Positions 10,446 to 52,283 of a stretch of DNA of 59,615 nucleotides are shown here, piece by piece. Every line of letters starts with the position of its first letter. Position 1 is the stretch's first letter. Where the stretch lies: assembly GCA_000320545.1 (NCBI GenBank), contig ADNK01002659.1:1-59615 (forward strand), written 5' to 3'. A program made the position numbers and the translations under genes. The stretch is from Bigelowiella natans CCMP2755 (Eukaryota; Protista; Cercozoa). The notes under the pieces are model-generated. The model was not told the origin of the DNA. It did not search any database and worked only from the letters and a program-made list of their open reading frames with translations.

Positions 10446-12013
10446 TTTTCGGATCGTTGTCGCTGGTGGAATGTCCACGCGATTTTGGACCTCACCTCCA
10501 CAAAATTGGTGATGGTGACACATTTGCAGAAAAGAGCCTGTTTTTGGGTTGTTCGCTGTTGTTTTGTGTCTCACCACCAACAGGGTGCTGACAAGTCCTT
10601 GCAACGAGTGTTGTTGAGGCTCTGCTGCACGCAAATGCCTGTGTCCCGTGTGGTTCTTGCGCATGTGGATTTGATCAACGCTTTTGCTCATTGTTCATTG
10701 TTCATTGTTGAGGCTCTGCTGCATGCAAACGCCTGTCTCCCACGCGGTTCTGGCGCATGCAGATTTGATCAACGCTTTGTTCATTGTTCGTTGTTCATTG
10801 TTCATTGTGGATGTTTGTGTGACAAGTCATGCTGCATGCAAACGCCTGTCTCCCATGTGGTTCTGGCGCGTGTGGATTTGATCAACGCTTTGTTCATTGT
10901 TCATTGTTCATTGGATGAGACAGACCTTCTCGGGAGTGAACCAAGCCGATCCGAGGCAGGCCAGCTGGGAAGGGCCAAATGAGTTTGCTCCTGAAACGAG
11001 TTCTCTGGGTGCTGACAAGTCCTTGCAACGAGTGTTGTTGAGGCTCTGCTGCGTGCAAACGCCTGTCTCCCATGTGGTTCTGGCGCATGCTGGCATGTGG
11101 ATTTGATCAACGCTTTGTTCATTGTTCATTGTTCATTGTTCTCTCCAATTTTTGAAGCAACTGGGATTGGACGACGAAGCAGAAGAGCTCAAAGAGAAGA
11201 TGACCGAGAAGAACAAAAAAGAGGCCGTCAGGGAGGGTGAAGCGAGGGCATGCGCGAGAGCAGAAACGGATGAGAGGAAATTGCTGGAGGCGAAACAGAA
11301 GGCAGAGGAGGAGGACAGCAACAGCATCAAGGAGCTGGAAGAAGCTGGAGCGAATCTTGCAACTGAGTTCGCCCAAGGAGAAACAACAGGAAACGAAGAA
11401 GGCGATTGAGAACTGTCTCAAAGAAGGGCAGAAGAAGCTGCCTGATGTGATGTCTGAGGGGAGTGGTTTGGGTGTGGCCGTTGGGGATGGCAAGCTGTTT
11501 GCGGTTGGTGGGCATGACGGTGGTGATCATCTCCAATCTGGGGAGCACCTGGATTTGGAAAAATGTTGTTGCGGGTGGAAGAAACTGTGACCATCAGGAG
11601 AGCTTTCTGGCTTTGAGTTTGGGTGCGGCTGTTGGGGATGGCAAGCTGTTTGCGGTTGGTGGGTCCGGCAAGAAATCTGGGGAGCATCTGGATTTGAAGA
11701 ATGTGAATGCGGGGTGGAAGAAACTGCCTGATGTGATGACTGAGAGAAGATGGTTGGGCGACGGCCGTTGGGGATGGCAATCTGTTTGCTGTTCAGTTTG
11801 GTGGGATGGCTGTTCATCATCCTTGACACTGAGGAATGTCTTCGCATCGTTGTCTGGACCGCTTCCGCACACACACCAGGTTCGCTGTCTGGAGATGGTT
11901 GGAAATGTGATCATTCATGGCCATCTGCAACTGCCACACCCAAACCATGTGACAATGTCTGTAGTTGTGCACTTCTCTTAGTCATCATGTCAGGTAGTGC
12001 CTTCCAGCCCGGC
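10446..12013 (+). pseudogene. Decayed coiled-coil plus Kelch-repeat gene relic within a TpA-free tract
   Basis: 11158-11430 is a charged coiled-coil. 11430-11800 holds three Kelch-like units (KKLPDVM..GLGVAVGDGKLFAVGGHDGGDHLQSGEHLDL...GWKKL) with frameshifts and a stop. An inverted Kelch fragment lies on the minus strand at ~11917-12013 (GWKALPDMMTKR..GLGVAVADG). Confidence 0.75.
10583..11140 (+). repeat. Four diverged copies of a ~100-130-bp unit, each ending in (TTCATTG)n
   Basis: Core TGCTGCAYGCAAAYGCCTGT..CCC....GGTTCT.GCGC..G..GATTTGATCAACGCTTT at ~10623, ~10717, ~10830 and ~11047. Copies 1 and 4 also share GGGTGCTGACAAGTCCTTGCAACGAGTGTTGTTGAGGC. Confidence 0.9.
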
Positions 12014-36760: not shown

Positions 36761-38044
36761 AGACCTTCTTCATCAAAGCGTTCCATTGCTCAACAGCCTC
36801 CTCGCCACCAAACTTGCGAAGCACCTCTACAAAGTCATCAGGGCCGACTTGAAAGCTGAAAAACCCTTCTGGCGTGTGCATCCCCCACGAGGTGTACGTG
36901 TCCCATTCCACCGTTTCACCTACCAGAGAATCGGACAATGAAGGGCGCATCATGTTTGCCACAAGTTAGGAAAATATCCGTCCAATCGTGAGCTGTTTGT
37001 GTGGGTTAGCGCTGCTGCGGAAACAACGACTGCGCAAATGTTCCCTTCGCCCTGCCTTAAAGTGAAAGTATCGCCTTCGTCTTCCTTCTAGATTATTTAG
37101 CATCATAATTGCACCGGACAAGAACTCCCATTTCTTCCATAAACTTTTGAAAATCCAACACGAAGTATGAGATGGTGATGCGGATCTACCGATTGCGTCT
37201 AGTACTTGTCGCAGAGGGTTTACCGAGGGAATCGACATTCCTAGTTGAGAAAGATTGTGTGTGTGTGTGTGTGTGTGTGATAGATAGTGAGAAAAGGAAG
37301 GGGGGGGGGGGGGGGGGGAGGAAGTAGATGATAACAACGATTGTTTGATTGTTGTATCTTCCTATCTCAACTAACGGCGCTTTGGGCAAACTAGGGGACA
37401 TACAAGCAAACGACGAGCAAAATAGATCACAAATTAACCTGCGTAGAGGGATGGTCCCGTATCAAAAAGAAAACCGTTTCGCTCAAATCCATGAGCTGCC
37501 CCTCCCGGTAAATAGTGACTTTCGAGAACCAACACGCTATACCCGTAGCGCGCCAACAACGCCGCGCAACACAGGCCTGTAGGGTATAAGCTACAATTAT
37601 GTTTCGTATTGATGCACATAAGAATATGAATGGCACCTCCAATTCCTGAACCAATAACAATGATGTCCGGCTGCTCTTGCTGGCCAGACTGAATGCTTGA
37701 TTTGCTCGAACCTGTCGGCGAAGCACGACCTGTCTGCGCCATTCTCCTACTGCCATGATTTCCATTCTTTCTAGCAATGTGTCTGAAGCGGTATCGGTCG
37801 TATAGAGCGATCAGGAAGGTTTCAACTTTGTTCAAAGGATTGGTTTTCCTTACTCGTTTGGCAATTGAGCCTTCTGCACTCCTCCCCTGGATCGACCTCG
37901 GAAGAATGGCTGGCCATGCGAATAAGTCTATGTTAGCAAGTAATAAATCTCAAATTTACGGGCTAAGAACTCATGCGCCTCACGTTCAGGATCGCATTTG
38001 TGCAGCTTCCGGTACGTTTGACCATAGGGCGCTGCAAGGGCCAT
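33205..38044 (-). CDS. CRTISO/CrtH-like FAD-dependent oxidoreductase (carotenoid isomerase/phytoene desaturase superfamily), probably plastid-targeted
   Basis: DIIVIGSGIGG|LCCAALLARYGYSVLVLESHYLPGGAAHGFERNGFLFDTGPSL, SVNPLRQVLDAIG, PKGGGRAIVDTLVRG, IVVSIPSLLDPSLAPEGHHVVHAY, SPLTHERFLRRHKGAYGP, CGDSCFPGVG|VPAVAASGINAANSI. The start position is approximate. Confidence 0.88.
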
Positions 38045-38239
38045 GGCGACCTGTGTTTCACCGAGAGCAAAGATTCAACATTCGCCTCAAAAACTAGGAG
38101 TACTGCAGACGGGACTTCATTACCTGAACCCAAGCAATGCAACTTGTAGCGCTAACACGAAGGCCGCACACACTGCCACAGCTCTGGAGCACCGACGACG
38201 TGCATGTCCACGTCGACCACCCGGGACCATTCTTCTTGA

Positions 38240-38620
38240 GGTGGAAATTGTGGCTGGATTTCAATCAAGATTGCATCCCCAATACTACCATTTTGTTTCT
38301 GTTCGCATGGCATCGACCAAAGCACTTTTACATCCAAACTGAAAAGATTGTTGAGTGCTCAATGCGACAGATCTCTGATGTTCCTTCAATGCTGCTTTTC
38401 CTAGATGAGATGTTGGAATGCGATTCAATTGTTGCATGTACGCAAACGAAACGTCTCGATGTTCGAATCCCCGAATTTTTCAACATGCGACAATGCGAAG
38501 TTCAATGTTCAACTAGTCAACTAGATCAAATGAAAGGTCACCTACCTGAGAGCCGTGGCCGGCGGGGTGTGAAGCAGACCCTCAAATTTTCTCAGTGTTC
38601 CAGTTGATCGAGGAGGACAC
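38240..38620 (+). mobile_element. Possible heavily decayed non-LTR (LINE) reverse-transcriptase fragment
   Basis: Frame-shifted fragments resembling LINE RT motifs: AGFQ..., ..ATDL*CSF.., GRRGVKQ followed by DPQIFSVF. The region is partially TpA-depleted (about 17 TA in 38101-38880 by hand count). Confidence 0.25.
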
Positions 38621-38651
38621 GGATGAGTTGACTTGTCCAGTGATCCGGCCT

Positions 38652-38674
38652 CATGGGGACTTCAAGTCCCCATG
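38652..38674. repeat. 23-bp near-perfect palindrome
   Basis: CATGGGGACTT-C-AAGTCCCCATG (11-bp arms, 1-nt centre). Confidence 0.9.
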
Positions 38675-38892
38675 CGTGTGCGCGTAGGAGAACACACGTG
38701 CCCATGCACACCACATGCACTTGAAAAGCACACATGGATGCACACATGCATGCATGAGCGTTAACAATGACAACAATTCATAGCGATCAAGGGGTTTGTG
38801 CCAATTTTCAATTGCGACGAACCAGTTGTAAGGTTGCGACACACATGTGTAAAGGCCATTTTTCAAGTTTTTGTTCTGCTTTGGTAAATTTA

Positions 38893-39107
38893 TCTAAATA
38901 AAATACGATAATGATTTCGAAATCAAAATCATTTTTATTTTTGATTTGGAAATCCAAATCATTTTTATTTTTGATTTGCAAATGTGATTTAGGCATATTT
39001 ATCAAATCAGAGGACGATTGTGAATTCCAAATCATTTTTATTTTTGATTTGGAAAAAACAAAGATGGCCATTTCATGGTCACGTGATCGACCGATCTGCG
39101 GGCCTAG
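38893..39107 (+). mobile_element. Candidate short non-autonomous Helitron-like element with three internal hairpin repeats
   Basis: A|TCTAAATAAAAT 5' end and CTAG|T 3' end. An imperfect 16-nt hairpin GGTCACGTGATCGACC ends 11 nt before CTAG. Three ~30-bp repeats AAATCATTTTTATTTTTGATTTG lie inside. It retains TA dinucleotides, unlike its right flank. Confidence 0.4.
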
Positions 39108-39271
39108 TGGACCTTTCGGGTCTTCTCCCATGCCAGCACGCTGCTGTGGAGACAACGGCGTGCAATTTGTGCAAGAATCAACAGGTGCAGTCACTGAACA
39201 CGATTTCAGATGCACCTTGTTTGGTCATCAACTGACGCTGCACGAGCTGCAGCTGCCATGATCAAACAACT

Positions 39272-39597
39272 TGTTGCGCGTAAGGTGTTCACAGGCCGAG
39301 GCGCTACGTGCACAAGTAGGCAGGGGGGGGGAAAGGCACGTTTGCTTCCTTTTGAAGAGTTGTGTTTATTTTTATTAAAGATTATATTTTTATTAAATCG
39401 TGCACTGCGTAATCATTCGCGAAGCTTTCGCGAATGCCGCCGCACGTGGGGCAGCACACTTCCGGTGTGCTGCCATGAGTCCCGCCGGAACCCACGTGCC
39501 CATGCTGTATTAATATCTACGTTATCTATATTCTATATCCGCGACAACCCCTTTGTTGTCGCACGTGACTTGTGCCCGCGTAGTGGTACGCGCTACA
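39272..39597 (-). repeat. 3' LTR (326 bp)
   Basis: Identical to 44662-44987. Terminal imperfect inverted repeat TGTTGCGCGTA / TACGCGCTACA. Confidence 0.97.
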
Positions 39598-39605
39598 CCT
39601 CCCCC
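39598..39605 (-). promoter_or_regulatory. Polypurine tract (GGGGGAGG) abutting the 3' LTR
   Basis: The minus strand reads ...CTTGGGGGAGG|TGTAGCG. Confidence 0.75.
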
Positions 39606-39648
39606 AAGTCACGTTGCTCCTTCCTTCCTTCCTTATTCCCTTAGACCT

Positions 39649-42600
39649 TCATCGCTTTCGGAACTTCACCAACCACCAGGTAATAGATTCCTCTCTAACC
39701 TTATCTCCTTTGTCGCTTACCCAGAACTCACCTTCGTCCTTAGGTTCGTGTCCATACCAGCCCTCTGCATCAAGGTCCCCCAGGACCTTATACCAGTGCT
39801 CAAAGGGTAAGTCGGGAACAGCTAGGTAGAGTAGCTGATATTTTCCGTCCTTTATTTTCATAGCTACCCTCTCCATATTTCGTAATCCAGGGTAGCCTAG
39901 ATAGACAATCTTCATGCGCCAATCGTCGTTCACCCTGACCTTATTGTTTCCATATTCCACATCGAACTTAGGTCGGGGTCCTAAACAAGGCATTGCTCGC
40001 TCCCACACAGTAGGGTTTACTTTAACATCCTCTAGGAGCTTCTCACCGATATCATAATTCTTTAGGTGACTGATGTGGCGCAAGGTGACCCTGTTCCCAT
40101 CATAGATGTAGTACTGCTTCCTCCCCTTCCTCTCGGTAACCTTTGCAACGCCACCCCAGAAGGGGTCTTGTTTATTTCTCGATCTCAGATTTACCTTGGC
40201 CCTAACATACTGTCCTTCCTTTAGAACTCGGCCATCGTACGGGACCTTCTCGTCTTCGCTCTCGGTATCGTCGTCGTTGTCGTCGCCTTCTTCCCTCTCC
40301 TTATCCTTGATACCTCCCCCAGACGTGAAGGTGTCGTTTACTAACCCTTGTATCTTGTCTGGTGTGGTGCTATTTATCCTGCTTAGGTTGGCCAAGGTGC
40401 GGTGGAGTCGCTCTACCTTGGAGTTGGACTGGGCATAGTATACAGGTGAGGCATCAATATTAGGGTGTGGTAGCTGTAGAAGAGAGGTCTCATTATCCAC
40501 ATGTAACTTCTTTGGTATCTTGTTTATGCTAACTTCATCAGGGATAGCCTGGAGCTCAGACTCCCAGGTACGGTAGCAGTTAGTAAGCCTCTGCTTATAT
40601 AAGCCTTTGTTCTTCTTAGCAACGTTGACCTTGATAATCTTTTTAACCCAGCACTTTCCAGTGGCCACATCAACGAAGGTAAGGTAGTGATAGCCATCGT
40701 ACTTATAAACATCAATTTGCACGATATCTAAGAAGTTCCTTGCTTTGATTTTCTTAGATGCACGGCTCTTGCTGGACTCCTTGGTGGCGACGCCTGCCGC
40801 CTTCAAGCTGGAGCACCTGCAGCCACGCAGGTATGTCCTTATCTCTTTTAGCTTGTAGGGCCAGTAGTAATGGTAGAGTAGAGCAGTGATATGGTTTTCT
40901 CCTACGTGTGCAGGTCCATGGGCGGTAAAGAGAAGGGCTCCCCTGGTCCGCCGTGGCACGTAGGTACGCCTAACATTATTAGTGTATACATATATCCTAT
41001 CACTAAGTACCTCATGCTTGTGTTTGTATTTATCCAGGTGTTCTTGAAGGTGCTGGAGCTCCTCTGGCTCAGGCAGGAAGTCGCCGTCCTCGAAGGTAAT
41101 CGCGTTAACCATAGGGGTGACCTGGGTAGGGACTTTCTTTTCGAACAGCCTGCTGAAATAGTCAGCAAGCTGCTTGTCTCCTGGTGCGTAGACCACTGTC
41201 CTCTTGTCCCTAAACTCTTCCGTGTCCGCCCTCATAGCTGCATACTCATCGTTAGGCGCTTCGAGCTTGCGGTCGATGCCTAGGAGGGGCTTGTGGTCAG
41301 TCATTAAGGTGAAGCTGGGCACCGACAGCAGGTAGTATCTTAGTTTCCTCTGCGCCTCAGTCATGGCTTTATACTCTCCTTTTGTAGGGCTGTACTTGGC
41401 CTCAGCTGCTGTGCAGGCCCTGCCCCACACCCGTATGATCTGCTGGTCTTGGGTAAGTACAGCAGCCATACCTAGCTTAGACCAGTCTGTCCATAGGGTA
41501 GCTGGTCTAGTAGTGTCTAGCTTAGCATTCAATAGGGTGTTGCTGCATAACTTTATTAGGTTATCGAAGTGGGCATCAAGGCCAGCCTTGGCCCACACCT
41601 TAGCGAAGCTGAGGCCTACAGAGTTCTCCTTCCGGTAAGCAGTAGTAAAAGCAGCTGCAGTCCTAGCGTAGGTAGGGGAGAACCTACGTAGTATCCAAGC
41701 TGCAGTCTGCAAGAATGACTTTAACTCCTTTGCATTCTTAGGTTTAGGGGCTTGCTGTAGTGCTGCTACTTTCTCGGGGTTTGGGGTGATGCGGCCTTGC
41801 TCCAGGTAATATCCACACCACTTGATTCTTGTAGCTAGGAATGTACACTTCTGCAGTCTAATAGTAAAACCGAAGTGTGCAAACCTAATAAATATATTTT
41901 CCAGGAGGAAGATCTGAGCGACGACTGTGTTGGTACATATTATGTCATCATCCACATACACAAACACAAACACCCACAACACAGACGCCATCCCATCATG
42001 TGTGTATGCCCTGTAGTTCTGACTACTGAACGCATCCCCTGATATGCTTAGGCCGTAAGGGAATACGACGAAGTGCCACTTCCTGTGCCTGCTGGAGAAC
42101 GCGGTAATGGGGCGGGAGGTTTTGTGGATGGGTGTCTGCATGTATGATTCATTTTTATCTAGGGAAGAGTAGTATTTGTATCCTATGACGTGTTCAATAA
42201 CGTCATCTATCCTTGGTGTAGGTGTCTGGATCCTCTTTATTACTCGGTTGTGGCGGATGAAGTTGTGCGCCAGGCGGAAGAAAGGGTAAGTAGGTTTCTT
42301 AGCTAGCACATGTCTCACGTTCCATGGTGAGTTGCTTGGCTCTATCTTCCCTTCCTTTGCCCATTCATTGATCTGCCACTCTATCTTTTCCCAGTCCGCT
42401 TCCGGTCGCCTATGTTCTGGGTCATTGATGATGCACTCTTCGTATCCCTTCTTTAGCTCGATCTTTACTGGGGTAAGCTTGCTGGAGGGCTTCGTCGTCG
42501 GCTTGGTGATGTCAGAGTACTTCTCGTTTAATATTTTATTAATGTACTTTTTGCCTTTGTCGATATCCCAATCATCAGCTGGGGGGGTCTTGTCCAGTAG

Positions 42601-44622
42601 CTCCGTTATCTGTCGGATGGTCTTGCCGGGGTTCTTCTTCCGTAGCTCGGTAGGTGTAGGTAGCTTGTTGTCCGCTAGGTCCATAAACTCTAACGCATTA
42701 ACGCTTGACTCAGAGGTCCACTCGTCAAGCCGTATCATGTTCTGGCTGATGGTCCTGCCTGACTTCTTTGGCAACTTAGCAAAGTATATCTTGTGATTGT
42801 AGAATGATATGATCCCCCCTAATTTTTCTAGGGCATCCTGTCCGAGGAGTAGTTCCATGGATAAAGTCATGGCTACTCGGGTCTTGATTTGGGTCTCCGC
42901 GTCGCTGCCAGGTATCTGTAGCTTTAGCATTAGCTCACCGACGGTCTTCATGGAAGAGCTTCCGTCTGCTTGAGCATATTTACGTTCTTTCTTAGTCACT
43001 TGATCCAATAGTCCTAACCTTCTTACTGTGCTTAGGCTTATGAAGGACTTCGGCATGCTGCCACTATCCCAAAGGGCAGGTAGTTTCTTGTAGTCTCCGT
43101 AGCTGTCTTTAACTTTAACCTTGGTCATAGCAACTTTGATAGTCCTGTTAGCGTCTTCGTCATTAATGTTGCATACTCCTAAGTTCTTTATGTCGTCTAG
43201 GGTCATGGGCTTGTCTTGGTCCTGCGTTGCTGGTACTGCTGTCTTCGTCGGCGCCTGCTTAAGGTGATCTAATATTCCGTTTATCTGCTGCTGTATAGCA
43301 TTGATACTGTTCTGCTTTTTGTTCTTATATTTATTGTTCTTCCCGTTGTTGCTGCCTTGCCATTTGCTGTTGTTATATCCTTGTCCTCTGCCTTTCTTTC
43401 TCTTTAACTTCTCGTAGTGTTCGTTGAGCTGCCTGATCGTCATCCTGGGTCGTCCTTCTTTCCTGTCTCTGCAGTCTTTAGCGGTGTGTTTCCCTTTACG
43501 TGAGCAGTATCCGCAACGTCGGTTACCTTCCCTGTCCTTGTACCAGTCTCGCTGCGGCTTAATAGCGTTAATGTTTCCTATGCCAGGTACCTTAGGGCTG
43601 GTAAACTTGCGGTCCTGCTCCTGCTCGCGTAGGGATATAGCCTGCACTGCTGCCTCCATCGTGGTGTAGCCTTTCTCCGTAACGTAAGTGGATTCCTTTA
43701 TCTTTAACTTGAACTCTTCAAACCTTGCCTGATCATCACCTGTGTTGTAATTAAAATCATGTAGTTCGTCGATCATATCCTGGAAGCGCGTGGCAAAGTC
43801 TCTAACAGGTTCTCTCTCATGCTGCATCATTGCTCTGTATTTTCTAATAGCCTGGGGTAGGGAGTTAGCATCCTGTTCATTTACAAAAGCCTTCATTATC
43901 GCCTCAACGTCTCGTAGCCCACTAACTGTAGTGTGTATTTTCTCTAGCTGCCTGATCCGGGTCCTGCCTGTCTCGTAAAGGTCCATGGCTTGCTTTATTA
44001 TAGCTAGCCATTTGAGCTTGTCGTTTTCGGTGGGGTTAGGGGTAAAGTCGCAGAGTATACTCCTAGCGTTCTTCCACCACCTCCTTGCCTCACCTCTTTT
44101 CCCGTTGTATTTCGTTATCATAACCGGTGCTGTTTTAACAGACATGAACTGGGTGTTCCGCTGTACCGGCTGCTGCTGCTTGACGGTGCTCTGGGTCGTC
44201 CCCCGCGAGGCGCCCAGACCCCCGTCGTTCCTAAACAAAGCTGCCCACTCTGGAGGTAAGTCTGCTTCGTAATCCATGATGTCCTGCATGATAGCTGCCC
44301 AAACATCATGTGTCTGATACTTGTATTCTATCGATACTTTCAGTTTGGCGTAGTTGCTCGCCCTGGGTCGCAAGGCTCGTAATGCCATTACGACCTTCTT
44401 GCTTTCGGCGGCCACGTCCTCGTCGTCCGCCTCGTAGAAGTTCTCCAGTGCCTCTGCTGCTGCATCTGCTTTCTTAATCCCGGGTGCTGGTCCCGGCGGT
44501 GCCTGTGGAGGTGTTCCTCCTCCTTCCTTAGCGTCCGTATCGCCCTTCCTTTCCTGTTTCTGCTCGTGCCCTTGCACGGCCTGCGAGCCAAAGTCCTGCT
44601 GTTCTTCTAGCTGCTGTGACAT
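39649..44622 (-). CDS. Gag-Pol polyprotein (1657 aa): Gag, zinc knuckle, aspartic protease, RT, RNase H, integrase, SH3-like tail and a C-terminal Dam/N6A-MTase-like domain
   Basis: CGYCSRKGKHTAKDC knuckle; ALWDSGS protease; LDKNESYMQ, FPYGL and YVDD RT; WTDWS, TDHKPL and ADYFSR RNase H; HGPAH..YYWP..CRC, VQIDV..TFVDV..HVDN..SNSKVERL integrase; DPFWGG..RHISHLK tail; DW..IVYLGYPG..RVAMKI..LAVPDLPFEHWYKVL. Confidence 0.95.
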   Translation of the reverse strand: MSQQLEEQQDFGSQAVQGHEQKQERKGDTDAKEGGGTPPQAPPGPAPGIKKADAAAEALENFYEADDEDVAAESKKVVMALRALRPRASNYAKLKVSIEYKYQTHDVWAAIMQDIMDYEADLPPEWAALFRNDGGLGASRGTTQSTVKQQQPVQRNTQFMSVKTAPVMITKYNGKRGEARRWWKNARSILCDFTPNPTENDKLKWLAIIKQAMDLYETGRTRIRQLEKIHTTVSGLRDVEAIMKAFVNEQDANSLPQAIRKYRAMMQHEREPVRDFATRFQDMIDELHDFNYNTGDDQARFEEFKLKIKESTYVTEKGYTTMEAAVQAISLREQEQDRKFTSPKVPGIGNINAIKPQRDWYKDREGNRRCGYCSRKGKHTAKDCRDRKEGRPRMTIRQLNEHYEKLKRKKGRGQGYNNSKWQGSNNGKNNKYKNKKQNSINAIQQQINGILDHLKQAPTKTAVPATQDQDKPMTLDDIKNLGVCNINDEDANRTIKVAMTKVKVKDSYGDYKKLPALWDSGSMPKSFISLSTVRRLGLLDQVTKKERKYAQADGSSSMKTVGELMLKLQIPGSDAETQIKTRVAMTLSMELLLGQDALEKLGGIISFYNHKIYFAKLPKKSGRTISQNMIRLDEWTSESSVNALEFMDLADNKLPTPTELRKKNPGKTIRQITELLDKTPPADDWDIDKGKKYINKILNEKYSDITKPTTKPSSKLTPVKIELKKGYEECIINDPEHRRPEADWEKIEWQINEWAKEGKIEPSNSPWNVRHVLAKKPTYPFFRLAHNFIRHNRVIKRIQTPTPRIDDVIEHVIGYKYYSSLDKNESYMQTPIHKTSRPITAFSSRHRKWHFVVFPYGLSISGDAFSSQNYRAYTHDGMASVLWVFVFVYVDDDIICTNTVVAQIFLLENIFIRFAHFGFTIRLQKCTFLATRIKWCGYYLEQGRITPNPEKVAALQQAPKPKNAKELKSFLQTAAWILRRFSPTYARTAAAFTTAYRKENSVGLSFAKVWAKAGLDAHFDNLIKLCSNTLLNAKLDTTRPATLWTDWSKLGMAAVLTQDQQIIRVWGRACTAAEAKYSPTKGEYKAMTEAQRKLRYYLLSVPSFTLMTDHKPLLGIDRKLEAPNDEYAAMRADTEEFRDKRTVVYAPGDKQLADYFSRLFEKKVPTQVTPMVNAITFEDGDFLPEPEELQHLQEHLDKYKHKHEVLSDRIYVYTNNVRRTYVPRRTRGALLFTAHGPAHVGENHITALLYHYYWPYKLKEIRTYLRGCRCSSLKAAGVATKESSKSRASKKIKARNFLDIVQIDVYKYDGYHYLTFVDVATGKCWVKKIIKVNVAKKNKGLYKQRLTNCYRTWESELQAIPDEVSINKIPKKLHVDNETSLLQLPHPNIDASPVYYAQSNSKVERLHRTLANLSRINSTTPDKIQGLVNDTFTSGGGIKDKEREEGDDNDDDTESEDEKVPYDGRVLKEGQYVRAKVNLRSRNKQDPFWGGVAKVTERKGRKQYYIYDGNRVTLRHISHLKNYDIGEKLLEDVKVNPTVWERAMPCLGPRPKFDVEYGNNKVRVNDDWRMKIVYLGYPGLRNMERVAMKIKDGKYQLLYLAVPDLPFEHWYKVLGDLDAEGWYGHEPKDEGEFWVSDKGDKVREESITWWLVKFRKR

Positions 44623-44638
44623 TGTTAGTCAAATCGTT

Positions 44639-44656
44639 TCCCGTGTGTGGAAGCCA
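44639..44656 (-). promoter_or_regulatory. Candidate tRNA primer-binding site TGGCTTCCACACACGGGA
   Basis: Begins with TGG (complement of the tRNA CCA) 5 nt after the 5' LTR. The cognate tRNA was not identified. Confidence 0.55.
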
Positions 44657-44661
44657 AAGGT

Positions 44662-44987
44662 TGTTGCGCGTAAGGTGTTCACAGGCCGAGGCGCTACGTG
44701 CACAAGTAGGCAGGGGGGGGGAAAGGCACGTTTGCTTCCTTTTGAAGAGTTGTGTTTATTTTTATTAAAGATTATATTTTTATTAAATCGTGCACTGCGT
44801 AATCATTCGCGAAGCTTTCGCGAATGCCGCCGCACGTGGGGCAGCACACTTCCGGTGTGCTGCCATGAGTCCCGCCGGAACCCACGTGCCCATGCTGTAT
44901 TAATATCTACGTTATCTATATTCTATATCCGCGACAACCCCTTTGTTGTCGCACGTGACTTGTGCCCGCGTAGTGGTACGCGCTACA
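44662..44987 (-). repeat. 5' LTR (326 bp)
   Basis: Identical to 39272-39597. On the minus strand it has an AT-rich TATA-like block, GC hairpins and repeated AATAAA. Confidence 0.97.
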
Positions 44988-45980
44988 AACTGAGCAACGC
45001 TGCTCGTTCGCATTGCGACGTTGCGTGCTGCATTGTGTGTCTCCATTGCTGGATTGTGGCAATCTGGCAATGCCCAAGTCCAGGAATGGCCTGGAAGTGT
45101 TTTGACATCCCAGTGACAATTTGAGCGCACACACGCGGACTTGCTTGCAATTGGCGCAGCAACTGGCGTGAGCTGCAGTTTGTGCGTGACGCACTGCTGG
45201 ACTGGCCGCCGCTCGTGGACCACACCCACTGCACCCACGTTTCACTTCTTCAGCATCGGCAGTGGCAAAAATTGCAAAAATGCGAAAGTGAAAATTTGCC
45301 TGTTGACGACCCAGTGCTGAACCTGGTTGCAAAAATGACGTGGTGAAAACCGTGGGCACGTCACACGTCTTGTTGGTGCTTGAAAACCGCACAGCAAGGA
45401 AGGACTCAATTGAACAGGTTTTGTCTCCAAATCAACTGGTGCGCAGTTGAGTCGGCGTTTGGCATCAGGGGAAAAATCGCTTTTGCTGCAAACAGAGAGT
45501 GAGGTGCTGACTTCATTGTGTTTCCTTGTGAGGCGTTGCAGGATGAAATGCACGTTGAAATTCAAAACCCAGCTTGCAATTCGATCTTGATGAGCTTGAC
45601 GGAAAAACACTGCGATCTCTTAATGAACGAACGATGAAAGTGTGATGTGGAATTCATTTTTTTTCAAAATGATCCACAGAGAGTTGCGAAAATTGTCTTC
45701 ATTCATGATCATCCTGCATTCAGATTGAAAATGGTCATTTAGACTGGTTTTGAAGAATGTCATCGTTGCTTTCCAAAAGACTTTTCTGCATTGGTGCTGC
45801 CAGTGAGAACGGCATCCATTTTTGACTGAATGAAGTCGAGGCAACGCAAAAATGAAATTTACAAAGTGCACAATTGTGGGTAATAATGTTGCACAAATTC
45901 CTTGACACAGACAGCAAATGGATTGCATTCATGTCCCATTTGAATTGCCGTTTTCCAGAGAAAATGAGAATAACGACATT
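44988..45980. other. TpA-free/TpA-poor relic DNA (continuation of 39108-39271, split by the LTR element)
   Basis: No TA from 44988 to 45620, then only scattered TA to ~45980. ORFs lying wholly inside contain no Tyr. Confidence 0.85.
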
Positions 45981-46391
45981 TCATACATGCTGTCGTAGAG
46001 GACAAATGCAGACCGTTGTACTGAAGCAATCATCATCGAACATCGGACTATTTAATTGATCGTTTGCAAAGGCAACATGGGATGCGCCGGATCTGTACAG
46101 AGCACGTTTCAAATAGCAGAAGCCATTAGCAGTAAGAGTTGAATATTGTTTTCCGATAAATATGTGCGCACTAATTGGAATAAAAATGTAATGAAGCACA
46201 ATCTCACGAGCAGTTGCAAATTGCAGTGAAAACTGACATGGTCGATCACGCCCTCACCCAATTTTATTTCTTACGCTAGGAACCCCATTAGTGCTGACGT
46301 ACGATAGTGAACAAATAGAAGAACTATCAAGTTTGCTCACTCTCAAGGCGTAATCCTTTTCAATAGAAAATTAAGCCACCATTTCACCCTA

Positions 46392-49300
46392 ATGAAACTA
46401 ATGACAGAAGATGCCCTGACCAGACAATCATACTAGCACTTTTACAGATATCGAAAAGGACAAAAGATTATTTCAAGCAAAGCATTTCCGAAGGACGCAT
46501 TTGTGCTTATCAATGTAGATAGAGTCTCCTACTCTGAGTATAGCTCTTACCTTTTCGATTACCAACCATCCTTAGGGCAAAGTTACGTTAAAGGTTGGCG
46601 AGAGAGCTGCTAATCTTTACTCAATGGATGTCAAAAAACTGTTTAAAGAAGGTTCTTTCGATAATATTTTACAGAAGGTTCTCTCGATGATAATTTATGA
46701 AATTAATTTCATTAAAATAAATCAGACAGTATATCCATTGAGGCTGGGAAGAGAGTTTCGTATGTAGCTGGCGAACATAGTTTAAGAAACATAAATAAGA
46801 GACGAAAATTAAGGCCTTTAAGGCGAGCCGAATTTGGCACTCAAGATTCAAAGTCTAAAAGGCAGATAGGGGAGATCATCCAGTCCCGAGTAAATATGAA
46901 GAGTCTTGCGGTGAATGCATTAGCAAATCAGAAACCTGAGATTAAGGCCTCACTTACAAGGCAAAATACATCTGAAGAAATATTATTCGATTATCCCAAA
47001 ATATGCAATCTAATATGTTTAAGGTTCAATAAGCCTTCAATTGTCTCTGAGTTTGAAATTGAAAAAGAAGGCCCTTGCCTATTGGCTGAAAAGGCATATT
47101 TCATGCTTCAGGGTAACAGTCAGTTTGTTCTAATTTTTTTAATTCAAATATCTTAGTCGCTGTGGAAACCATTGGAAGAACTAAAAGCCGGGGATTGTCC
47201 TGAAATTATTGTGTCACAGGATTCTCTAATAGCAACTATCACCCCAAAGTCGTAAGCATATCAACTACATGTTGGTTATGAAGCATGTAGTAACGTAAAC
47301 TGTAACATGTATGTTTCATAGGATCATGAAAAAATTCAACAAAAATGCCAGGAATCTTGAGTGTAGTTTGAGGTTGAAGGTAGCCTCCACAAGTCCACAA
47401 GTAAAAATCGGAGACTATGATCATCTTCGTATAATGATTGTATAGGGCGTATTTTCGGGTGGAATCCTCACTATGCTTCAGCAAATTGACTTTCTTTCAG
47501 CTTTGAATAAGGTAATACAAGTTTTTATAGCTAATATAGATGTAAAAATTCATATATATATATATATATTCATAAAACCTTTCCTTTAAATTGAAACATA
47601 ATACATAAAACTTAGAATGGACTTGAAGTCCTATCAAATGCTTTAAAATACCAAGTTTTGGCTCCAGGAGAAGTACATTCAAGAAGCCGAAGGCCGATGT
47701 ATAGATCTTTCCGTAGACATATGTTCCTTTAATCTACAGGTATTGTTCAAAGAAGGGTCGACTGGATCCGAGTTTTATATGGTGTATCAGGGCGAGGTTT
47801 TCTGCTTTACATTCAAGAAGTAAGGGGGAAATTAAGACATCTGTTTTAGGTGGATATCACGAAGGAAGTTACAAAAATAAAGAGGACCGTCGCATCAGTA
47901 TCCTATACTGCTCTATAGTAAGTTAGATTCAATCATACATTCTTGAATTTCAGAATCGTGATGCTCGAGAGAGCTTCACCAACATCACAAATGATGCAAA
48001 AGTAACTTCTCTCGGGGCTGGAGATTTCTTTGGGTTTAGAAAAATGATAACATTAAATATATGTTTTAATTGCTGCTGTACTTTTTCGAATAAGTATCAC
48101 CTTGGCTAACACTTCTCTGCATCTAGGGAGATAACTCTTCTGACTGACATGCCCAGAACTGCTACGGTAGTTTATTCAAGTTCATATGCAAAAGGAGTGT
48201 TACAACACGTTATAAATAAGGTTACTGGGAGTACCGACTGCAGCTACTGTGTCATCCTATCGATAGAAAAACGCAGCTTCAATAAATTCATCGACGTCCG
48301 AATACATGTTATAAATGGACTAACAGGGTCTAATAACTTTAATGGTACTTACCATTCTTCAGGCTGTCGAGCTTGATTTTGTTGAAATAATGAAAGAAAG
48401 AATTTGTGAGCAGGTTCAACAATTATATCTCCCTTGACCAGAAAGAAGATCTGAAGATAGTTTTTGTTTCAGTTTCGGTCAACAGATTGCGCGTTCTTTC
48501 AGAACTTCCCAGAGTAGTTGTAACAAGTTGATATTGTACTACGCAATAATATTTTGGCATCGTTTATCAAAGGTCTAGAATGCCTGCGCTGGCAAAGGAG
48601 TGCGAGCTCACCAAAGTAGGGTGTGCTATGAAAACTATTTGTTCATATTGTAAGTACGTGGATTGATCAATGAACTAGGTGACAGAAAATGAATGGATAT
48701 TCAAAGAAGGGGACGAGGGGGACCAATTTTATATCATTGTTGGAGGGAAGGTCACAGTGTCTCGGGAAGGAAGAGAAATTGCCACTCTCTCAAGAAATCA
48801 ATATTTTGGTCTGTAATAGTTTACTTGTAGATGATGTTCACAGATGACCCATACAATTTTAACAGGCGAAATCGCGTTAATTTCTGACTCTCCAAGAACA
48901 GCGAGCGTGCAAAGCAAATCGACATGTCTACTTCTATCTATGACAAAACACAGCTTTCGCACAATGTTTTATGACTGTCCAGAGAGCCTTGCCGAAGTAT
49001 TTACTAATTTCCTAGCCTATGATCTTTGTGCTTGAATATGAAAATGAACATAATATTTGAATTAGGTTGAACTTAAAATCCTTGGAAAGAAAACCTCCTT
49101 GCGCTCGGTTATCTATCACCCAGAAGGTGCATATTTGAAATTATTCAACAACTATATTGATTACCCTATCCAATTAGGATATAAAATCTTTGAAGCTTAT
49201 CTAGTAGAACGATATGCTGCCGAAAGTCTCAGGTACTCCAGACAAAACTAAATTAATTTTGAAATATAAATAGCTATTTAGGTTTTGGAAAGCGGCTCGC

Positions 49301-51400
49301 ACTTATCGACACAGCATGGACTATGTTTACGAAAGGTTATGTTGGTAATCTACGGTGAAAATTTTCCATATAAGTATGATACTCATTTTAGTATTCAGAA
49401 GGAACGAATGTCTGCTCCTCAAAGAAGCATGCAGTTGAGTAGTCGAGGTTTAATATTAATTTCACACGACGTGTATCAGTATTACGTATCCAACAGAGAC
49501 ACAGAAGGGAATGAAGATTCAAAACAGGCTCATAGAATCAATAAAGCAGATTCGATGCCGACGGAAATTTGTAGCCCAACGATAAAAATAGGTTGGGTGC
49601 TTTGAAAATATTCCTTGATTGTATACAGTCTACATATGTTCTTTTTCTGTTTTTACTAAAGCTAAGGATGCAAATTTTGATGGAGGCAGCAAAATAAAAT
49701 ATGAACCTGAAAATTTGACGGAAGGACAACATGCAGCCATAGATGAAACAGCAGATAGGAAAACTAAGAATAACGAGAAAGAAGAGGAAGAAGCAAAAGA
49801 TAGGGAAGGAATTTCACAAATGGAAGAATCCACAATTCTCACCGGAGATTTGGAAGAAACAAACGAATCGTTGCTGTTACAGAGCCCTCAGGCACAAGTG
49901 AACTTTCATGAAGACGATCACAACCTAAATCCTGAGACTCCTACAAAATACCTAAAGAAGACGCTAAAGTATAATCTTTGTAGTTTTTTTTCATTTATGG
50001 TATCCTTTTTCGAAAAATAAGGACTCACTCACAATTCATATTATGATGAAATTCCCTCGTTATAGGTCAAGTAGCACAGAGTTTTCTCCTCCCGAAGAGG
50101 TTTGCAGAGCAACTTCAGAAAGACAATACCTCCGACTTCATTATCTAAGCATCCTAGTTGTATCCGTGCATCAACTTCAGCGCTATAGCGCGCCACTAGC
50201 CAACTCTTGCATATTCATGACAATTAGGTCAAACAGAAGAAAAGCCGGCGAACTCATACAATTCTCTTCGAAAGGGTTTGATCCAATAAATTGACGTAAA
50301 ATTTAACAACTTTGCAACCATCTCTGAAAAGTAAACTTTTTACAGAGTGTTACCCTTGCACAAGCAGAAGAGCCAATTTTAACAGAGGTATCAACGAAGA
50401 AATATGTGCATATATTATTTATGCAGATTCGAAACGTTTTTTGTTACCCTTTAGGATCAGCAACGGGATCTTATCAGAACTGCACAGTTTGTGTTCAACG
50501 AATTTATACGAGTCGGTGCTCCCCAGCAGGTGAAATTTGTAGTTTGATCATACATTGCATGCAGTATTTTAATCTTCCAAAAAAGGTAAACATCCAAGGC
50601 CGAACTCGAGAGAAAATTGTACAAGTAGAAACAATTAAAATATATTTACGCCTATATATATGTACATTATCTCATAGGAAATGAAAAATGCTAGGATCGA
50701 TACTCAGCTTTTTGTTGGTACATTGAAAGCGGAGTAGTTCAGTTGCATATATCTAATTTTTCCCAGTCACATGAAAAAAAAGATGCACTCTGAAAATGTA
50801 ATTTCTGAATCAAAAGAGAACACCAATCACCGTGTCTGCTATGTATATCTTGTGAAAACTGTTTCTGCATTTTTGGGAGTATATCTCTGAGTTTAATGTT
50901 TTACCTGCATATTTTCTATGCTGCTTCCTATTCCAGACGCCGAAACCGAGGCGATTAAACTGCTACAACGGGATAAGTTTCCGGGTTAAAAAAAATTAAA
51001 GAGTTTTTAGATTCATTGAAAGAAAGTTGAATGTCCTTCAGATTTCAGAGCTAGTTCCAGCTTTGAGAACCTCATCAATCTTGTATGCAATGGAACTTAC
51101 GTTGTTGATGAGCGAACTATGAAAGGAGCTAAGAAAATAAGACGAAAATCACTGGATAGGTTGGCATATAGCACTAGTGCTACGATTATCAGAAACATGG
51201 AGATTATCATCAATATATTCACATATTATAAATATAATAATGTTTTACTATCTTCAAAGAGTCCATTCCATTAGTTCATGTGTTTATATTTTCTCGTTCT
51301 TTCGGCTCTGTTGCTTACGTGTAATAAAGCTCACATATCTTGGTGGTTTTTTACTAGGACGAAAAGTAATCATAGCATCGGTGCGTAAAGTTGATTTTTC
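46392..51400 (+). CDS. Cyclic-nucleotide-binding (2-3 cNMP domains) plus RGS domain protein, many short introns (ends approximate)
   Basis: VLFKEGSTGSEFYMVYQGE..LGAGDFFG|EITLLTDMPRTAT and WIFKEGDEGDQFYIIVGGKVTV..QYFG|EIALISDSPRTASV. RGS motifs: FEAYLVERYAAESLR|FWKAA, AQFVFNEFIRVGAPQQ|VNI, AETEAIKLLQRDKFP|FRASSSF. Confidence 0.85.
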
Positions 51401-52283
51401 TATATAAATTGCAATGGATACGTTACAACTCGCCCTTTTTAGCAAAATGATAGACATGCTATTATCATATACAAACTCATGAAAAGGCGTACATCAATAA
51501 AGAGTAATTGCAAAGCTAGCCTAAAAGACCCCGGGATGATGAATAAAATTTGTGCCAGACATGCTAGCATGGATAGGCTAAGAAACCATCTAGACCATGC
51601 GTAGAGATGTGTTAATTAAGCTAATCGTATACACGTCTGCAACAAGACTGTGACTCCTCATTGATCGATGTAGTGGCCATGAGCAATAACGCCATGCGTG
51701 CGCATAGTATGCACAGTATTTACCTTTTTATCTTAATTTTATTAAGCTATGCCATTTAGTTATGCCTGCTGTTAGATGCATACTAGCATACGAGGACAAT
51801 CTAGCATTGGATGCCATTGTAAGCGCTTCTACGAGCCCTGAGTTTCATTGGTGTAGCTATTCTTACACATATCATAGATGTGTGATGTACGCTAGCACTG
51901 CTTGCATGCGATTGCATCAGGTGTGAAGAGCGTTTCTACTTTAGTACTCCATGCATGATTTCATGACATCTCCTAGATCTATCTCTAGACCTACCTATCT
52001 AGCTATGCGCTCAAACATGCTAGCATAGACTCATGGCGTGCATCACAACTAGCAGCCGCACTTCATTGTATAGCAACATTTCATACATAATTTGGTTTTT
52101 CATTCTATCTGATCAATTTTACATATCTTAGCTAGTAAGCAGAGTCTAGCAGTATCCTGGCTGACATCTAGAGCATAGCGCACTGCTGACTGGCTAGCTG
52201 GGGGCACAACAAAAAGCTCAGTGTGCACAACAACCCTGCAAAGCCGCTAGCTTCCTCTGAATGACAAATACGATAGCAGCACA

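What the first reader, a model, noticed from the sequence alone, without database searches (positions are those of the whole stretch)
39108..45620. Second TpA-free tract, split by a pristine LTR element, which dates the mutational process
Seen: 39108-39271 and 44988-45620 contain no TA (~800 nt once the element and one TSD are removed), with TA-poor shoulders at 38100-38880 and 45620-45980. The element between them has identical LTRs, an intact ORF and abundant TA. Inference: TA erasure preceded the insertion, and this copy has either not yet been hit or is protected. The element also landed inside already-mutated DNA between two divergent genes.
Basis: partly seen in the sequence, partly recalled or inferred. 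Interest (0 to 1): 0.8.

Follow-up and report, generated by a model that had tools for sequence, protein, structure and literature searches.

The report
Young retrotransposon inside TpA-erased repeat DNA
A very young jumping gene of the alga Bigelowiella natans sits in old repeat DNA that had already lost every TA to the host's published TpA-to-TpG/CpA hypermutation, and other copies of this undamaged family lie in such erased islands far more often than chance allows.

Summary
The flanks 39106-39271 and 44988-45621 hold no TA. With the element and one 4-nt target duplication removed they form one 796-nt TA-free run (CA+TG o/e 1.71). Simulated sequence never exceeded 296 nt.

The genome is Bigelowiella natans. 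TpA->TpG/CpA hypermutation of foreign DNA in this species was published in a 2026 preprint (10.64898/2026.01.13.699255), so the tract is another footprint of a known process. It is built of dispersed repeats. Copies elsewhere keep TA where this one reads TG or CA, and three paralogues run across the insertion point.

The insert (39272-44987) is a Ty3/gypsy-order LTR retrotransposon with identical 326-nt LTRs and an intact 1657-aa ORF. Its family has at least 285 near-identical junctions. Only one TpA-type change was seen in 59.5 kb of other copies. Erasure therefore came first, and the family is effectively untouched.

What goes beyond the preprint:
- 17 of 28 flanks of other copies are TpA-depleted, against 3 of 94 control windows (p about 7e-11). 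Depletion decays within 1 kb.
- CTAG is the slowest context to be erased.

Homing and selective retention are not separated. The insertion orders events at this locus only and does not date the process. An earlier scan follow-up (s1-710577) reached the same reading on other DNA of this genome.

The parts
37434..37835 (-). Exon of the left neighbour gene (N-terminal NAD(P)-binding / amine-oxidase-like fold). It runs away from the tract.
   Evidence: Pfam NAD_binding_8 E=7.9e-12 and Amino_oxidase E=1.4e-6.
38100..38880 (.). Left TA-poor shoulder (partly hypermutated). It contains an approximately 85-nt dispersed repeat at about 38651-38737.
   Evidence: TA o/e 0.32, CA 1.53, TG 1.55. About 30 genomic matches at 80-95% identity to query positions 551-637.
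38881..39105 (.). AT-rich block of about 55-nt repeat units that still holds 13 TA and interrupts the depleted region.
   Evidence: Repeat family D2. TA contexts listed. Matches on contig C1140 at 84-94% identity.
39106..39271 (.). Left part of the TA-free tract. It belongs to dispersed repeat A (about 39077-39271, continuing at 44992-45025).
   Evidence: 0 TA, CA 1.80, TG 1.87. Paralogues L001, L002 and L020 align across the junction.
39268..39271 (.). Target-site duplication AACT, left copy.
   Evidence: Read directly from the sequence. Other full-length copies also carry 4-nt duplications.
39272..39597 (-). LTR (the 3' LTR in the element's sense orientation), TG...CA ends, 23 TA.
   Evidence: 326/326 identical to 44662-44987. 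40 scored genomic matches at about 100% identity.
39598..39610 (-). Polypurine tract next to the 3' LTR (sense strand).
   Evidence: The purine run abuts the LTR on the sense strand. Assigned by position and composition only.
39649..44622 (-). Intact gag-pol ORF, 1657 aa: weak gag, protease, RT, RNase H, integrase zinc finger and a divergent integrase core.
   Evidence: Pfam RVT_1, RT_RNaseH, RT_RNaseH_2. Weak gag-asp_proteas, Retrotrans_gag and Integrase_H2C2 hits. Weak match to PFV integrase. Ty3/gypsy-type polyproteins as relatives.
44640..44656 (-). Candidate primer-binding site (begins TGG, 5 nt inside the 5' LTR).
   Evidence: Position only. Not matched to a tRNA.
44662..44987 (-). LTR (the 5' LTR in sense orientation).
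   Evidence: Identical to 39272-39597.
44988..44991 (.). Target-site duplication AACT, right copy.
44988..45621 (.). Right part of the TA-free tract.
   Evidence: 0 TA in 634 nt, CA 1.48, TG 1.82.
45206..45383 (.). Hypermutated copy of dispersed repeat B (about 190-nt core, at least 40 genomic copies at 74-80% identity).
   Evidence: matches; alignment and core. At the 8 consensus TA sites this copy reads 3 TG, 2 CA, 3 other and 0 TA, while TA-retaining copies keep 6-7 of 8.
45622..45980 (.). Right TA-poor shoulder.
   Evidence: TA o/e 0.14, CA 1.65, TG 1.69.
10445..11962 (.). First TA-free tract of the window (context). It is repeat DNA with no LTR element nearby.
   Evidence: 1518-nt void. 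433 first-look candidates in the genome. CA+TG o/e 1.54.

Best explanation
The window is nuclear DNA of Bigelowiella natans. The TA-free DNA is a patch of old, non-coding dispersed repeats lying next to a host gene. The host's TpA-specific hypermutation rewrote it to saturation, turning each TA into TG or CA. The preprint proposes adenine deamination on either strand as the chemistry; that step is inferred and was not shown here. Later, and very recently, a Ty3/gypsy-order LTR retrotransposon integrated into the patch, made a 4-nt AACT duplication and split the tract. The element belongs to a burst of at least 285 near-identical copies that carry no hypermutation damage. High copy number alone therefore does not trigger the process, and this family is at present not a target. 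Copies of the family lie non-randomly inside small TpA-erased islands of about 1 kb. This could arise from integration preference for this (presumably silent) compartment, from survival of only such insertions, or from both. Shown: the void, its TA->TG/CA origin, the order of events, the family's intactness, and the flank association. Inferred: the deaminase chemistry, the reason the family escapes, and the cause of the association.
For: Species: JGI Bigna1 gene models match the pol C-terminus at 100% identity. The assembly is 91.4 Mb, consistent with the approximately 94.5-Mb genome implied by the preprint (85.0 Mb callable = 90%). Known process: mutation-accumulation lines show A->G/T->C only at TpA, and there are 124 TpA-depleted, CpA+TpG-enriched clusters genome-wide. 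Signature here: TA o/e 0 and CA+TG o/e 1.71, beyond the preprint's cut-offs of 0.43 and 1.52. Direction: at repeat-B consensus TA sites the tract copy reads TG or CA, and different hypermutated copies show TG or CA at the same site. Order of events: paralogues cross the insertion point, and the boundaries are sharp to the base. Family state: 40/40 scored LTRs at about 100% identity, 285 exact right-junction matches, and 28 differences in 59.5 kb of which only one is TpA-type. At the per-TpA rate derived from the preprint (1.09e-5 per generation), that allows at most about 105 generations of exposure. Association: in the first 500 nt of flank, 19/30 windows have TA o/e <= 0.43 (17/28 without this locus) against 3/94 in the rest of the window (Fisher p 5e-12 and 7e-11). 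The fraction falls from 63% to 34% to 12-16% with distance. Of 1-kb flanks, 10/27 are below the published 5% quantile (p 4e-7). Seven full-length copies on large contigs give 8/14. A further copy in L002 abuts a tract about 1.27 kb long whose residual TAs are nearly all CTAG. Depleted flanks of other copies are themselves dispersed repeats.
Against: The control for the flank test is small: 94 windows from one contig plus a published quantile. Several sampled copies sit on short contigs that may be repeat-rich. No old copy of this family was found, so the claim that the family is exempt rests on rates taken from two viral regions and may not transfer. The process is episodic in the preprint (only some lines), so a young family could simply not have met an active episode. 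No chromodomain or other reader domain was found in the integrase, which leaves the homing idea without a molecular handle.
Confidence: 0.8

Rival explanations
1. Homing. The element's integration machinery is directed to TpA-erased islands, for example by a chromatin mark or bound silencing factor on hypermutated DNA, or by the DNA's altered composition. The co-location is then a property of integration itself.
For: 63% of adjacent flanks are depleted against 3% of control windows, with the deepest depletion right at the junction and decay within 1 kb. The burst is very recent at 0.05% divergence, which leaves little time for slow purging. At this locus a 3-kb AT-rich stretch with no long ORF lies next door (46000-49200) yet the element sits in the 796-nt void. 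Three of 22 insertions lie in or beside copies of the same repeats A/B.
Against: No chromodomain or other reader domain was detected. The fold of the C-terminus failed, with pLDDT 34.6. The 4-nt duplications show no target consensus. The fraction of neutral intergenic DNA that is TpA-depleted is unknown, so retention could account for much of the excess.
Confidence: 0.45
2. Retention only. Integration is near random, and only copies that landed in dead repeat DNA, which in this genome is largely TpA-erased, escaped purifying selection in a gene-dense genome.
For: The genome has about one gene per 4.4 kb (21,708 CDS in about 94 Mb), so most sites are probably costly for a 5.7-kb insert. The islands are old repeats. 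Four of the sampled loci have ordinary flanks (L021, L022, L030, L033).
Against: Depletion peaks within the first 200-500 nt instead of being a broad regional property. The islands are a small share of the DNA surveyed: 3% of control windows, and the 5% quantile by definition in the preprint.
Confidence: 0.35
3. The erasure followed the insertion. The element triggers hypermutation that spreads into its flanks while its own sequence is protected.
For: Depletion is strongest next to the element and decays with distance.
Against: The element and the whole family are undamaged to the last base. TA-free islands exist without any element (tract 1). No match to the element was found in the fetched parts of L001, L003 or L020. 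Saturating erasure needs about 2.7e5 generations at the measured rate, while the family shows at most about 105 generations of exposure.
Confidence: 0.04
4. The TA void is kept by selection or function (for example a regulatory region that avoids TA, TAA/TAG stops or TA-targeting transposons) and is not made by mutation.
For: It lies next to the 5' end of a gene.
Against: The DNA is made of dispersed repeats whose other copies keep TA. TG and CA alternate as outcomes at the same ancestral site. No Pfam domain was found in its ORFs. The same signature arises de novo in MA lines.
Confidence: 0.03

Closest known systems
TpA->TpG/CpA hypermutation of integrated viral and other foreign DNA in Bigelowiella natans (Mettrop et al., bioRxiv 10.64898/2026.01.13.699255, 2026)
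   Same: Same species. Same signature: TpA loss with CpA+TpG gain, beyond the paper's cut-offs. The targets are repeat or foreign-like DNA, and the islands are clustered.
   Different: The main text of the preprint does not mention LTR elements, retrotransposons, CTAG or heterochromatin. It does not report that a young high-copy retrotransposon family is untouched, that this family sits preferentially in erased islands, or that CTAG is the most resistant context.
Repeat-induced point mutation (RIP) of fungi
   Same: A dinucleotide-specific transition hypermutation that wrecks repeats and leaves islands of skewed composition.
   Different: RIP is C->T at CpA and enriches TpA, so the chemistry and outcome are opposite. 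RIP is triggered by duplication. Here at least 285 near-identical copies are untouched, and a single-copy viral region is hit, so copy number is neither sufficient nor necessary.
Targeted integration of LTR retrotransposons into silent DNA (Ty5 at yeast heterochromatin; chromodomain-bearing Ty3/gypsy 'chromoviruses'). From general knowledge, not tested here.
   Same: A Ty3/gypsy-order element is found mostly in a small, presumably silent, repeat-derived compartment.
   Different: No chromodomain or tethering motif was found. Targeting itself is unproven and retention bias remains open.
ADAR hyper-editing and APOBEC3 editing of retroelements in animals (as discussed in the preprint)
   Same: Deaminase-type transitions with a 5' neighbour preference, directed at selfish elements.
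   Different: Those enzymes act on RNA or on reverse-transcription intermediates. Here resident chromosomal DNA, including non-retroelement repeats and partly depleted shoulders, is changed on both strands.

Membership tests
TpA hypermutation footprint of B. natans (Mettrop et al. 2026) | [quoted passage not shown] | tested here: met
   Joined tract: 0.00 and 1.71. With shoulders: 0.22 and 1.57.
TpA hypermutation footprint of B. natans (Mettrop et al. 2026) | Changes are TA->TG or TA->CA relative to an unmutated relative | tested here: met
   Repeat B: 5 of 8 consensus TA sites read TG or CA and none is retained in the window copy. L001 and L004 have 7/8 and 6/8 converted. TA-retaining copies keep 6-7/8.
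TpA hypermutation footprint of B. natans (Mettrop et al. 2026) | The genome is B. natans | tested here: met
   100% identical JGI Bigna1 models.
TpA hypermutation footprint of B. natans (Mettrop et al. 2026) | The target is foreign or selfish DNA | tested here: inconclusive
   The tract is built of dispersed repeats. No transposase, RT or viral domain was found in it. One paralogue, L001, has a sub-threshold UvrD_C_2 hit.
TpA hypermutation footprint of B. natans (Mettrop et al. 2026) | Elevated de novo A->G/T->C rate at this locus in MA lines | not testable with these tools
   This needs the MA read data.
Ty3/gypsy (Metaviridae-type) LTR retrotransposon | Direct LTRs with TG...CA ends and a short target duplication | tested here: met
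   326-nt identical LTRs and AACT duplication. 4-nt duplications at six other full-length copies.
Ty3/gypsy (Metaviridae-type) LTR retrotransposon | Domain order protease - RT - RNase H - integrase | tested here: met
   Residue positions: protease-like about 513-599, RT 798-939, RNase H 1018-1118, integrase zinc finger about 1222-1269. Protease and integrase hits are below Pfam cut-offs. The integrase has a weak match to PFV integrase and weak rve-cluster look-alikes.
Ty3/gypsy (Metaviridae-type) LTR retrotransposon | Pol is homologous to known gypsy-type polyproteins | tested here: met
   99 relatives at E <= 1e-10. Nearly all carry RT and RNase H and most also an integrase core (rve); they include 'Gypsy retrotransposon integrase-like' and K02A2.6-like proteins. 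The nearest are unnamed, at 38-47% identity.
Chromovirus (chromodomain-bearing Ty3/gypsy) | Chromodomain at the integrase C-terminus | tested here: not met
   No PF00385 hit at E <= 1 in the last 583 aa. The last 258 aa have no relatives outside B. natans. The fold attempt was unusable. A divergent reader domain is not excluded.
Fungal RIP | C->T at CpA, triggered by sequence duplication | tested here: not met
   CpA and TpG are enriched, not depleted. A family with at least 285 copies is untouched.

The most novel reading that the evidence does not exclude
An active retrotransposon family homes to the scars of the host's own genome defence. It integrates preferentially into islands already rewritten by TpA hypermutation, because it recognises a mark or DNA property of that compartment, and it is itself invisible to the mutator. 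This gives it a safe haven and shows that the mutator is guided by something other than repetitiveness.
Probability: 0.35. Interest if true: 0.7.

Novelty: new member of a known kind. Interest (0 to 1): 0.45.

Why it matters
The hypermutation itself is already published, so the tract adds one more clean example. It does have a proven direction (TA to TG/CA against sister repeat copies) and a proven order of events.

Three things go beyond the preprint and are directly testable with the authors' existing mutation-accumulation reads.

1. A family of at least 285 near-identical, apparently expressed retrotransposon copies is untouched, while a single-copy viral region is hit. Targeting is therefore not by copy number, as it is in RIP.
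2. This family is concentrated in erased islands. That is either a homing behaviour or a measure of how little neutral space the genome has.
3. The tetranucleotide context matters. ATAT is erased first, and CTAG survives at full density in partly erased DNA. This constrains the enzyme or points to a protection of CTAG.

Tried and rejected
1. Plot of TpA o/e against LTR divergence: not possible. All 40 scored LTRs and all fetched copies are 99.7-100% identical, and no diverged copy of the family was found in about 240 kb of held DNA by tblastn or blastn.

I did not try to obtain the letters another way. The control is therefore the rest of the window plus the preprint's 5% quantile.

3. Reader domain in the integrase C-terminus: nothing found. 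Pfam gave no chromodomain. PDB sequence search gave only a weak match to the PFV integrase N-terminal/core region. Atlas look-alikes scored below 0.9. There are no relatives outside B. natans to build an alignment. The single-sequence AlphaFold model had pLDDT 34.6 and was not searched.

4. A simple single-position rule for CTAG sparing (-2 C blocks, or +1 G blocks): rejected. GTAG sites in repeat B give both GTGG and GCAG.

5. A second target context, CAT->CGT: the three hypermutated repeat-B copies show 13/33 such changes against 7/132 in TA-retaining copies. However, the three copies share the changes, which may be a subfamily trait, and CATG is enriched, not depleted, in erased DNA. I treat it as unresolved, not as a finding.

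6. TE protein relics in the tract or in other depleted flanks: none above threshold.

7. Right-hand neighbour gene: ORFs at 49285-51407 on the plus strand have no Pfam match, so 'divergent genes' stays half verified.
Full report
**1. Observation**

A direct count of dinucleotide-free runs gives three outliers for TA: 10445-11962 (1518 nt), 44985-45621 (637 nt) and 39106-39281 (176 nt). No other dinucleotide has a void above 365 nt. In 200 Markov simulations of the window the longest TA-free run averaged 138 nt and never passed 296 nt.

Inside the voids CA and TG stand at 1.5-1.9 times expectation, while the LTR element between them has TA o/e 1.13. Joining 39106-39271 to 44992-45621 gives a 796-nt run without TA, with CA+TG o/e 1.71.

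An AT-rich repeat block at 38881-39105 still carries 13 TA and separates the left shoulder from the void.

**2. The element**

The LTRs are 39272-39597 and 44662-44987. They are identical at 326/326 positions, end in TG...CA and are flanked by an AACT duplication.

The sense strand is the window's minus strand. A polypurine run abuts the 3' LTR, and a TGG-initiated candidate primer site lies 5 nt inside the 5' LTR (assigned by position only).

The 1657-aa ORF (39649-44622, minus strand) carries RT and RNase H above Pfam cut-offs. Weak gag, aspartic protease and integrase zinc-finger matches lie in the gypsy order, and there is a weak match to the integrase of PFV. Its RT-RNase H-integrase part has 99 relatives at E <= 1e-10. 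Nearly all are RT/RNase H polyproteins, most with an integrase core, and some are named gypsy-type. The nearest are unnamed environmental sequences at 38-47% identity.

**3. Species and prior knowledge**

The C-terminal part of the ORF matches JGI 'Bigna1' gene models at 100% identity, so the genome is Bigelowiella natans. Scan notes pointed to a preprint, which I read. Its main points are these:
- In mutation-accumulation lines, two integrated viral regions mutate about 1000-fold faster than the rest of the genome.
- These mutations are almost only A->G/T->C and always fall at TpA.
- An ADAT2-like deaminase is proposed as the enzyme.

The main text does not mention LTR, retrotransposon, CTAG or heterochromatin.

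**4. What the TA-free DNA is**

It is not unique DNA. Window positions about 45206-45383 are a copy of a dispersed repeat with a core of about 190 nt and at least 40 copies at 74-80% identity (repeat B). Positions 39077-39271 plus 44992-45025 belong to a second repeat (repeat A). Its paralogues L001, L002 and L020 align straight across the insertion point. These act as empty-site paralogues and show that the two halves were once contiguous.

At the eight consensus TA sites of repeat B, the window copy reads TG three times, CA twice, another dinucleotide three times and TA never. Two other copies lying in depleted DNA (L001, L004) have 7/8 and 6/8 converted. Copies in ordinary DNA keep 6-7 of 8. 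The same ancestral site reads TG in one copy and CA in another. This is the direct proof of direction.

No protein domain was found in the tract's ORFs. Tract 1 is also repeat DNA, with 433 first-look candidates.

**5. Order of events and 'dating'**

The void reaches the first base outside each LTR, while the element holds 395 TA, 23 of them in each LTR. Erasure therefore stopped before integration.

The family is very young:
- 40 of 40 scored LTR matches are about 100% identical.
- There are 285 exact matches to the right junction whose first flank base is not C.
- 20 fetched copies differ from the window copy at only 28 positions in 59.5 kb, and just one of those is a TpA->TpG change.

From the preprint's numbers (211 mutations, 6169 TpA, 3132 generations) I derive 1.09e-5 changes per TpA per generation. 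At that rate:
- Losing 95% of TpA takes about 2.7e5 generations.
- About 4100 TpA sites were surveyed in other copies, and these allow at most about 105 generations of exposure.

At the ordinary rate of 3.46e-10, the family's 4.7e-4 divergence allows up to about 1.4e6 generations. The family is therefore better described as not targeted than as merely not yet hit, with the caveat that the process is episodic.

The insertion orders two events at this locus. It does not date the process, which is still active elsewhere.

**6.

I fetched 20 other loci that hold the family and masked the element. The share of 500-nt windows with TA o/e <= 0.43, by distance from the LTR end, is:

| Distance from LTR end | Windows with TA o/e <= 0.43 |
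|---|---|
| 0-500 nt | 19 of 30 (17 of 28 without this locus) |
| 500-1000 nt | 34% |
| Beyond 1 kb (bins with n >= 19) | 12-16% |
| Rest of this window (control) | 3 of 94 |

Fisher's test gives p = 5e-12, or 7e-11 without this locus. Ten of 27 1-kb flanks fall below the published genome-wide 5% quantile (binomial p = 4e-7). Seven full-length copies on large contigs give 8 of 14.

The flanks are not homologous to each other at the junction, and the 4-nt duplications share no motif. No relic of the same pol was found in any of the held DNA, flanks included. Three depleted flanks that I queried are dispersed repeats in their own right.

One locus fetched for a different reason (L002, a repeat-A paralogue) turned out to hold yet another copy of the family. 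It abuts a tract of about 1.27 kb whose residual TAs are nearly all CTAG.

The co-location is therefore real. Its cause is open. A reader domain that could tether the integrase was not found.

An earlier follow-up in this scan (s1-710577) reached the same reading on other DNA of this genome. My test is independent of it but rests on the same genome.

**7. Context dependence**

I compared 27.9 kb of depleted 300-nt windows with 99.6 kb of ordinary DNA from the held loci.
- CTAG is as frequent per nucleotide in the depleted DNA as in the ordinary DNA (ratio 1.07) and makes up 37% of the surviving TAs.
- The other fifteen NTAN contexts fall to 0.006-0.22 of their ordinary density. ATAT is lowest. 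Contexts with C or G on one side are highest.
- In the most depleted windows CTAG drops to 0.68.
- The two complete voids of this window hold no CTAG, where about 5 would be expected.

CTAG is therefore the slowest context, not an absolutely protected one. A single-neighbour rule does not explain it, because GTAG gives both GTGG and GCAG.

**8. Neighbours**

To the left, a minus-strand exon with an N-terminal NAD/FAD-binding fold ends at 37835, so that gene points away from the tract. To the right, no gene could be named.

**9. Verdict**

The underlying process is already published for this species. The parts that go beyond the preprint are the untouched high-copy family, its concentration in erased islands, and the CTAG context effect. 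All three are testable with existing data.

Noticed in passing
Held loci L001-L040 and the window; clearest at L002:300-1566: In partly erased DNA, CTAG survives at full density (ratio 1.07) while the other NTAN contexts drop 5- to 170-fold. ATAT is erased first. The two complete voids of this window have lost CTAG too.
   Followed up: yes
window 11237-11590 (+), inside the first TA-free tract 10445-11962: An ORF in the TA-free repeat DNA has a Kelch-motif match (E=4.7e-7). The tract has 433 first-look matches in the genome, with internally repeated units of about 360 nt.
   Followed up: partly
window 38881-39105: An AT-rich block of about 55-nt hairpin-like repeat units keeps 13 TA in the middle of otherwise depleted DNA. 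It has relatives on contig C1140 at 84-94% identity. It may be a later insertion or a sequence the mutator does not touch.
   Followed up: no
Repeat B copies: window 45206-45383, L001, L004: The three hypermutated copies share A->G changes in CAT context (ACAT -> ACGT; 13/33 against 7/132 in other copies). ACGT and CACG/CGTG are 2.2- to 2.7-fold enriched in erased DNA. This could be a subfamily trait or a slow secondary target.
   Followed up: partly
L024:8717-9716 (contig C274) and its paralogues on C1576, C3106, C2208: A TA-free 1-kb flank (TA o/e 0.08) has three other genomic copies at 97% identity over its full length. Either already-mutated DNA was copied, or the 3% difference is discordant TG/CA outcomes of independent erasure.
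   Followed up: no
Proteins P0005, P0007, P0008 (JGI Bigna1 models): Three gene models join host-like domains (PF10520, WW, and others) to the C-terminus of this element's pol at 96-100% identity. They are probably chimeric predictions across insertions. Several pol models are 'estExt', which hints that the family is transcribed.
   Followed up: no
L021 (C2758), L023 (C285), L028 (C1846): These are internally deleted or rearranged copies of the family. L021 lacks element positions 4347-4579. L023 lacks 4253-4769. L028 carries a duplicated 600-nt segment at 98.7% identity.
   Followed up: no
L001:229-867 (+), next to repeat A/B paralogues: A TA-depleted ORF has a sub-threshold UvrD_C_2 helicase match (E=5.6e-5, below the Pfam cut-off). 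It could be a relic of a helicase-bearing transposon.
   Followed up: no
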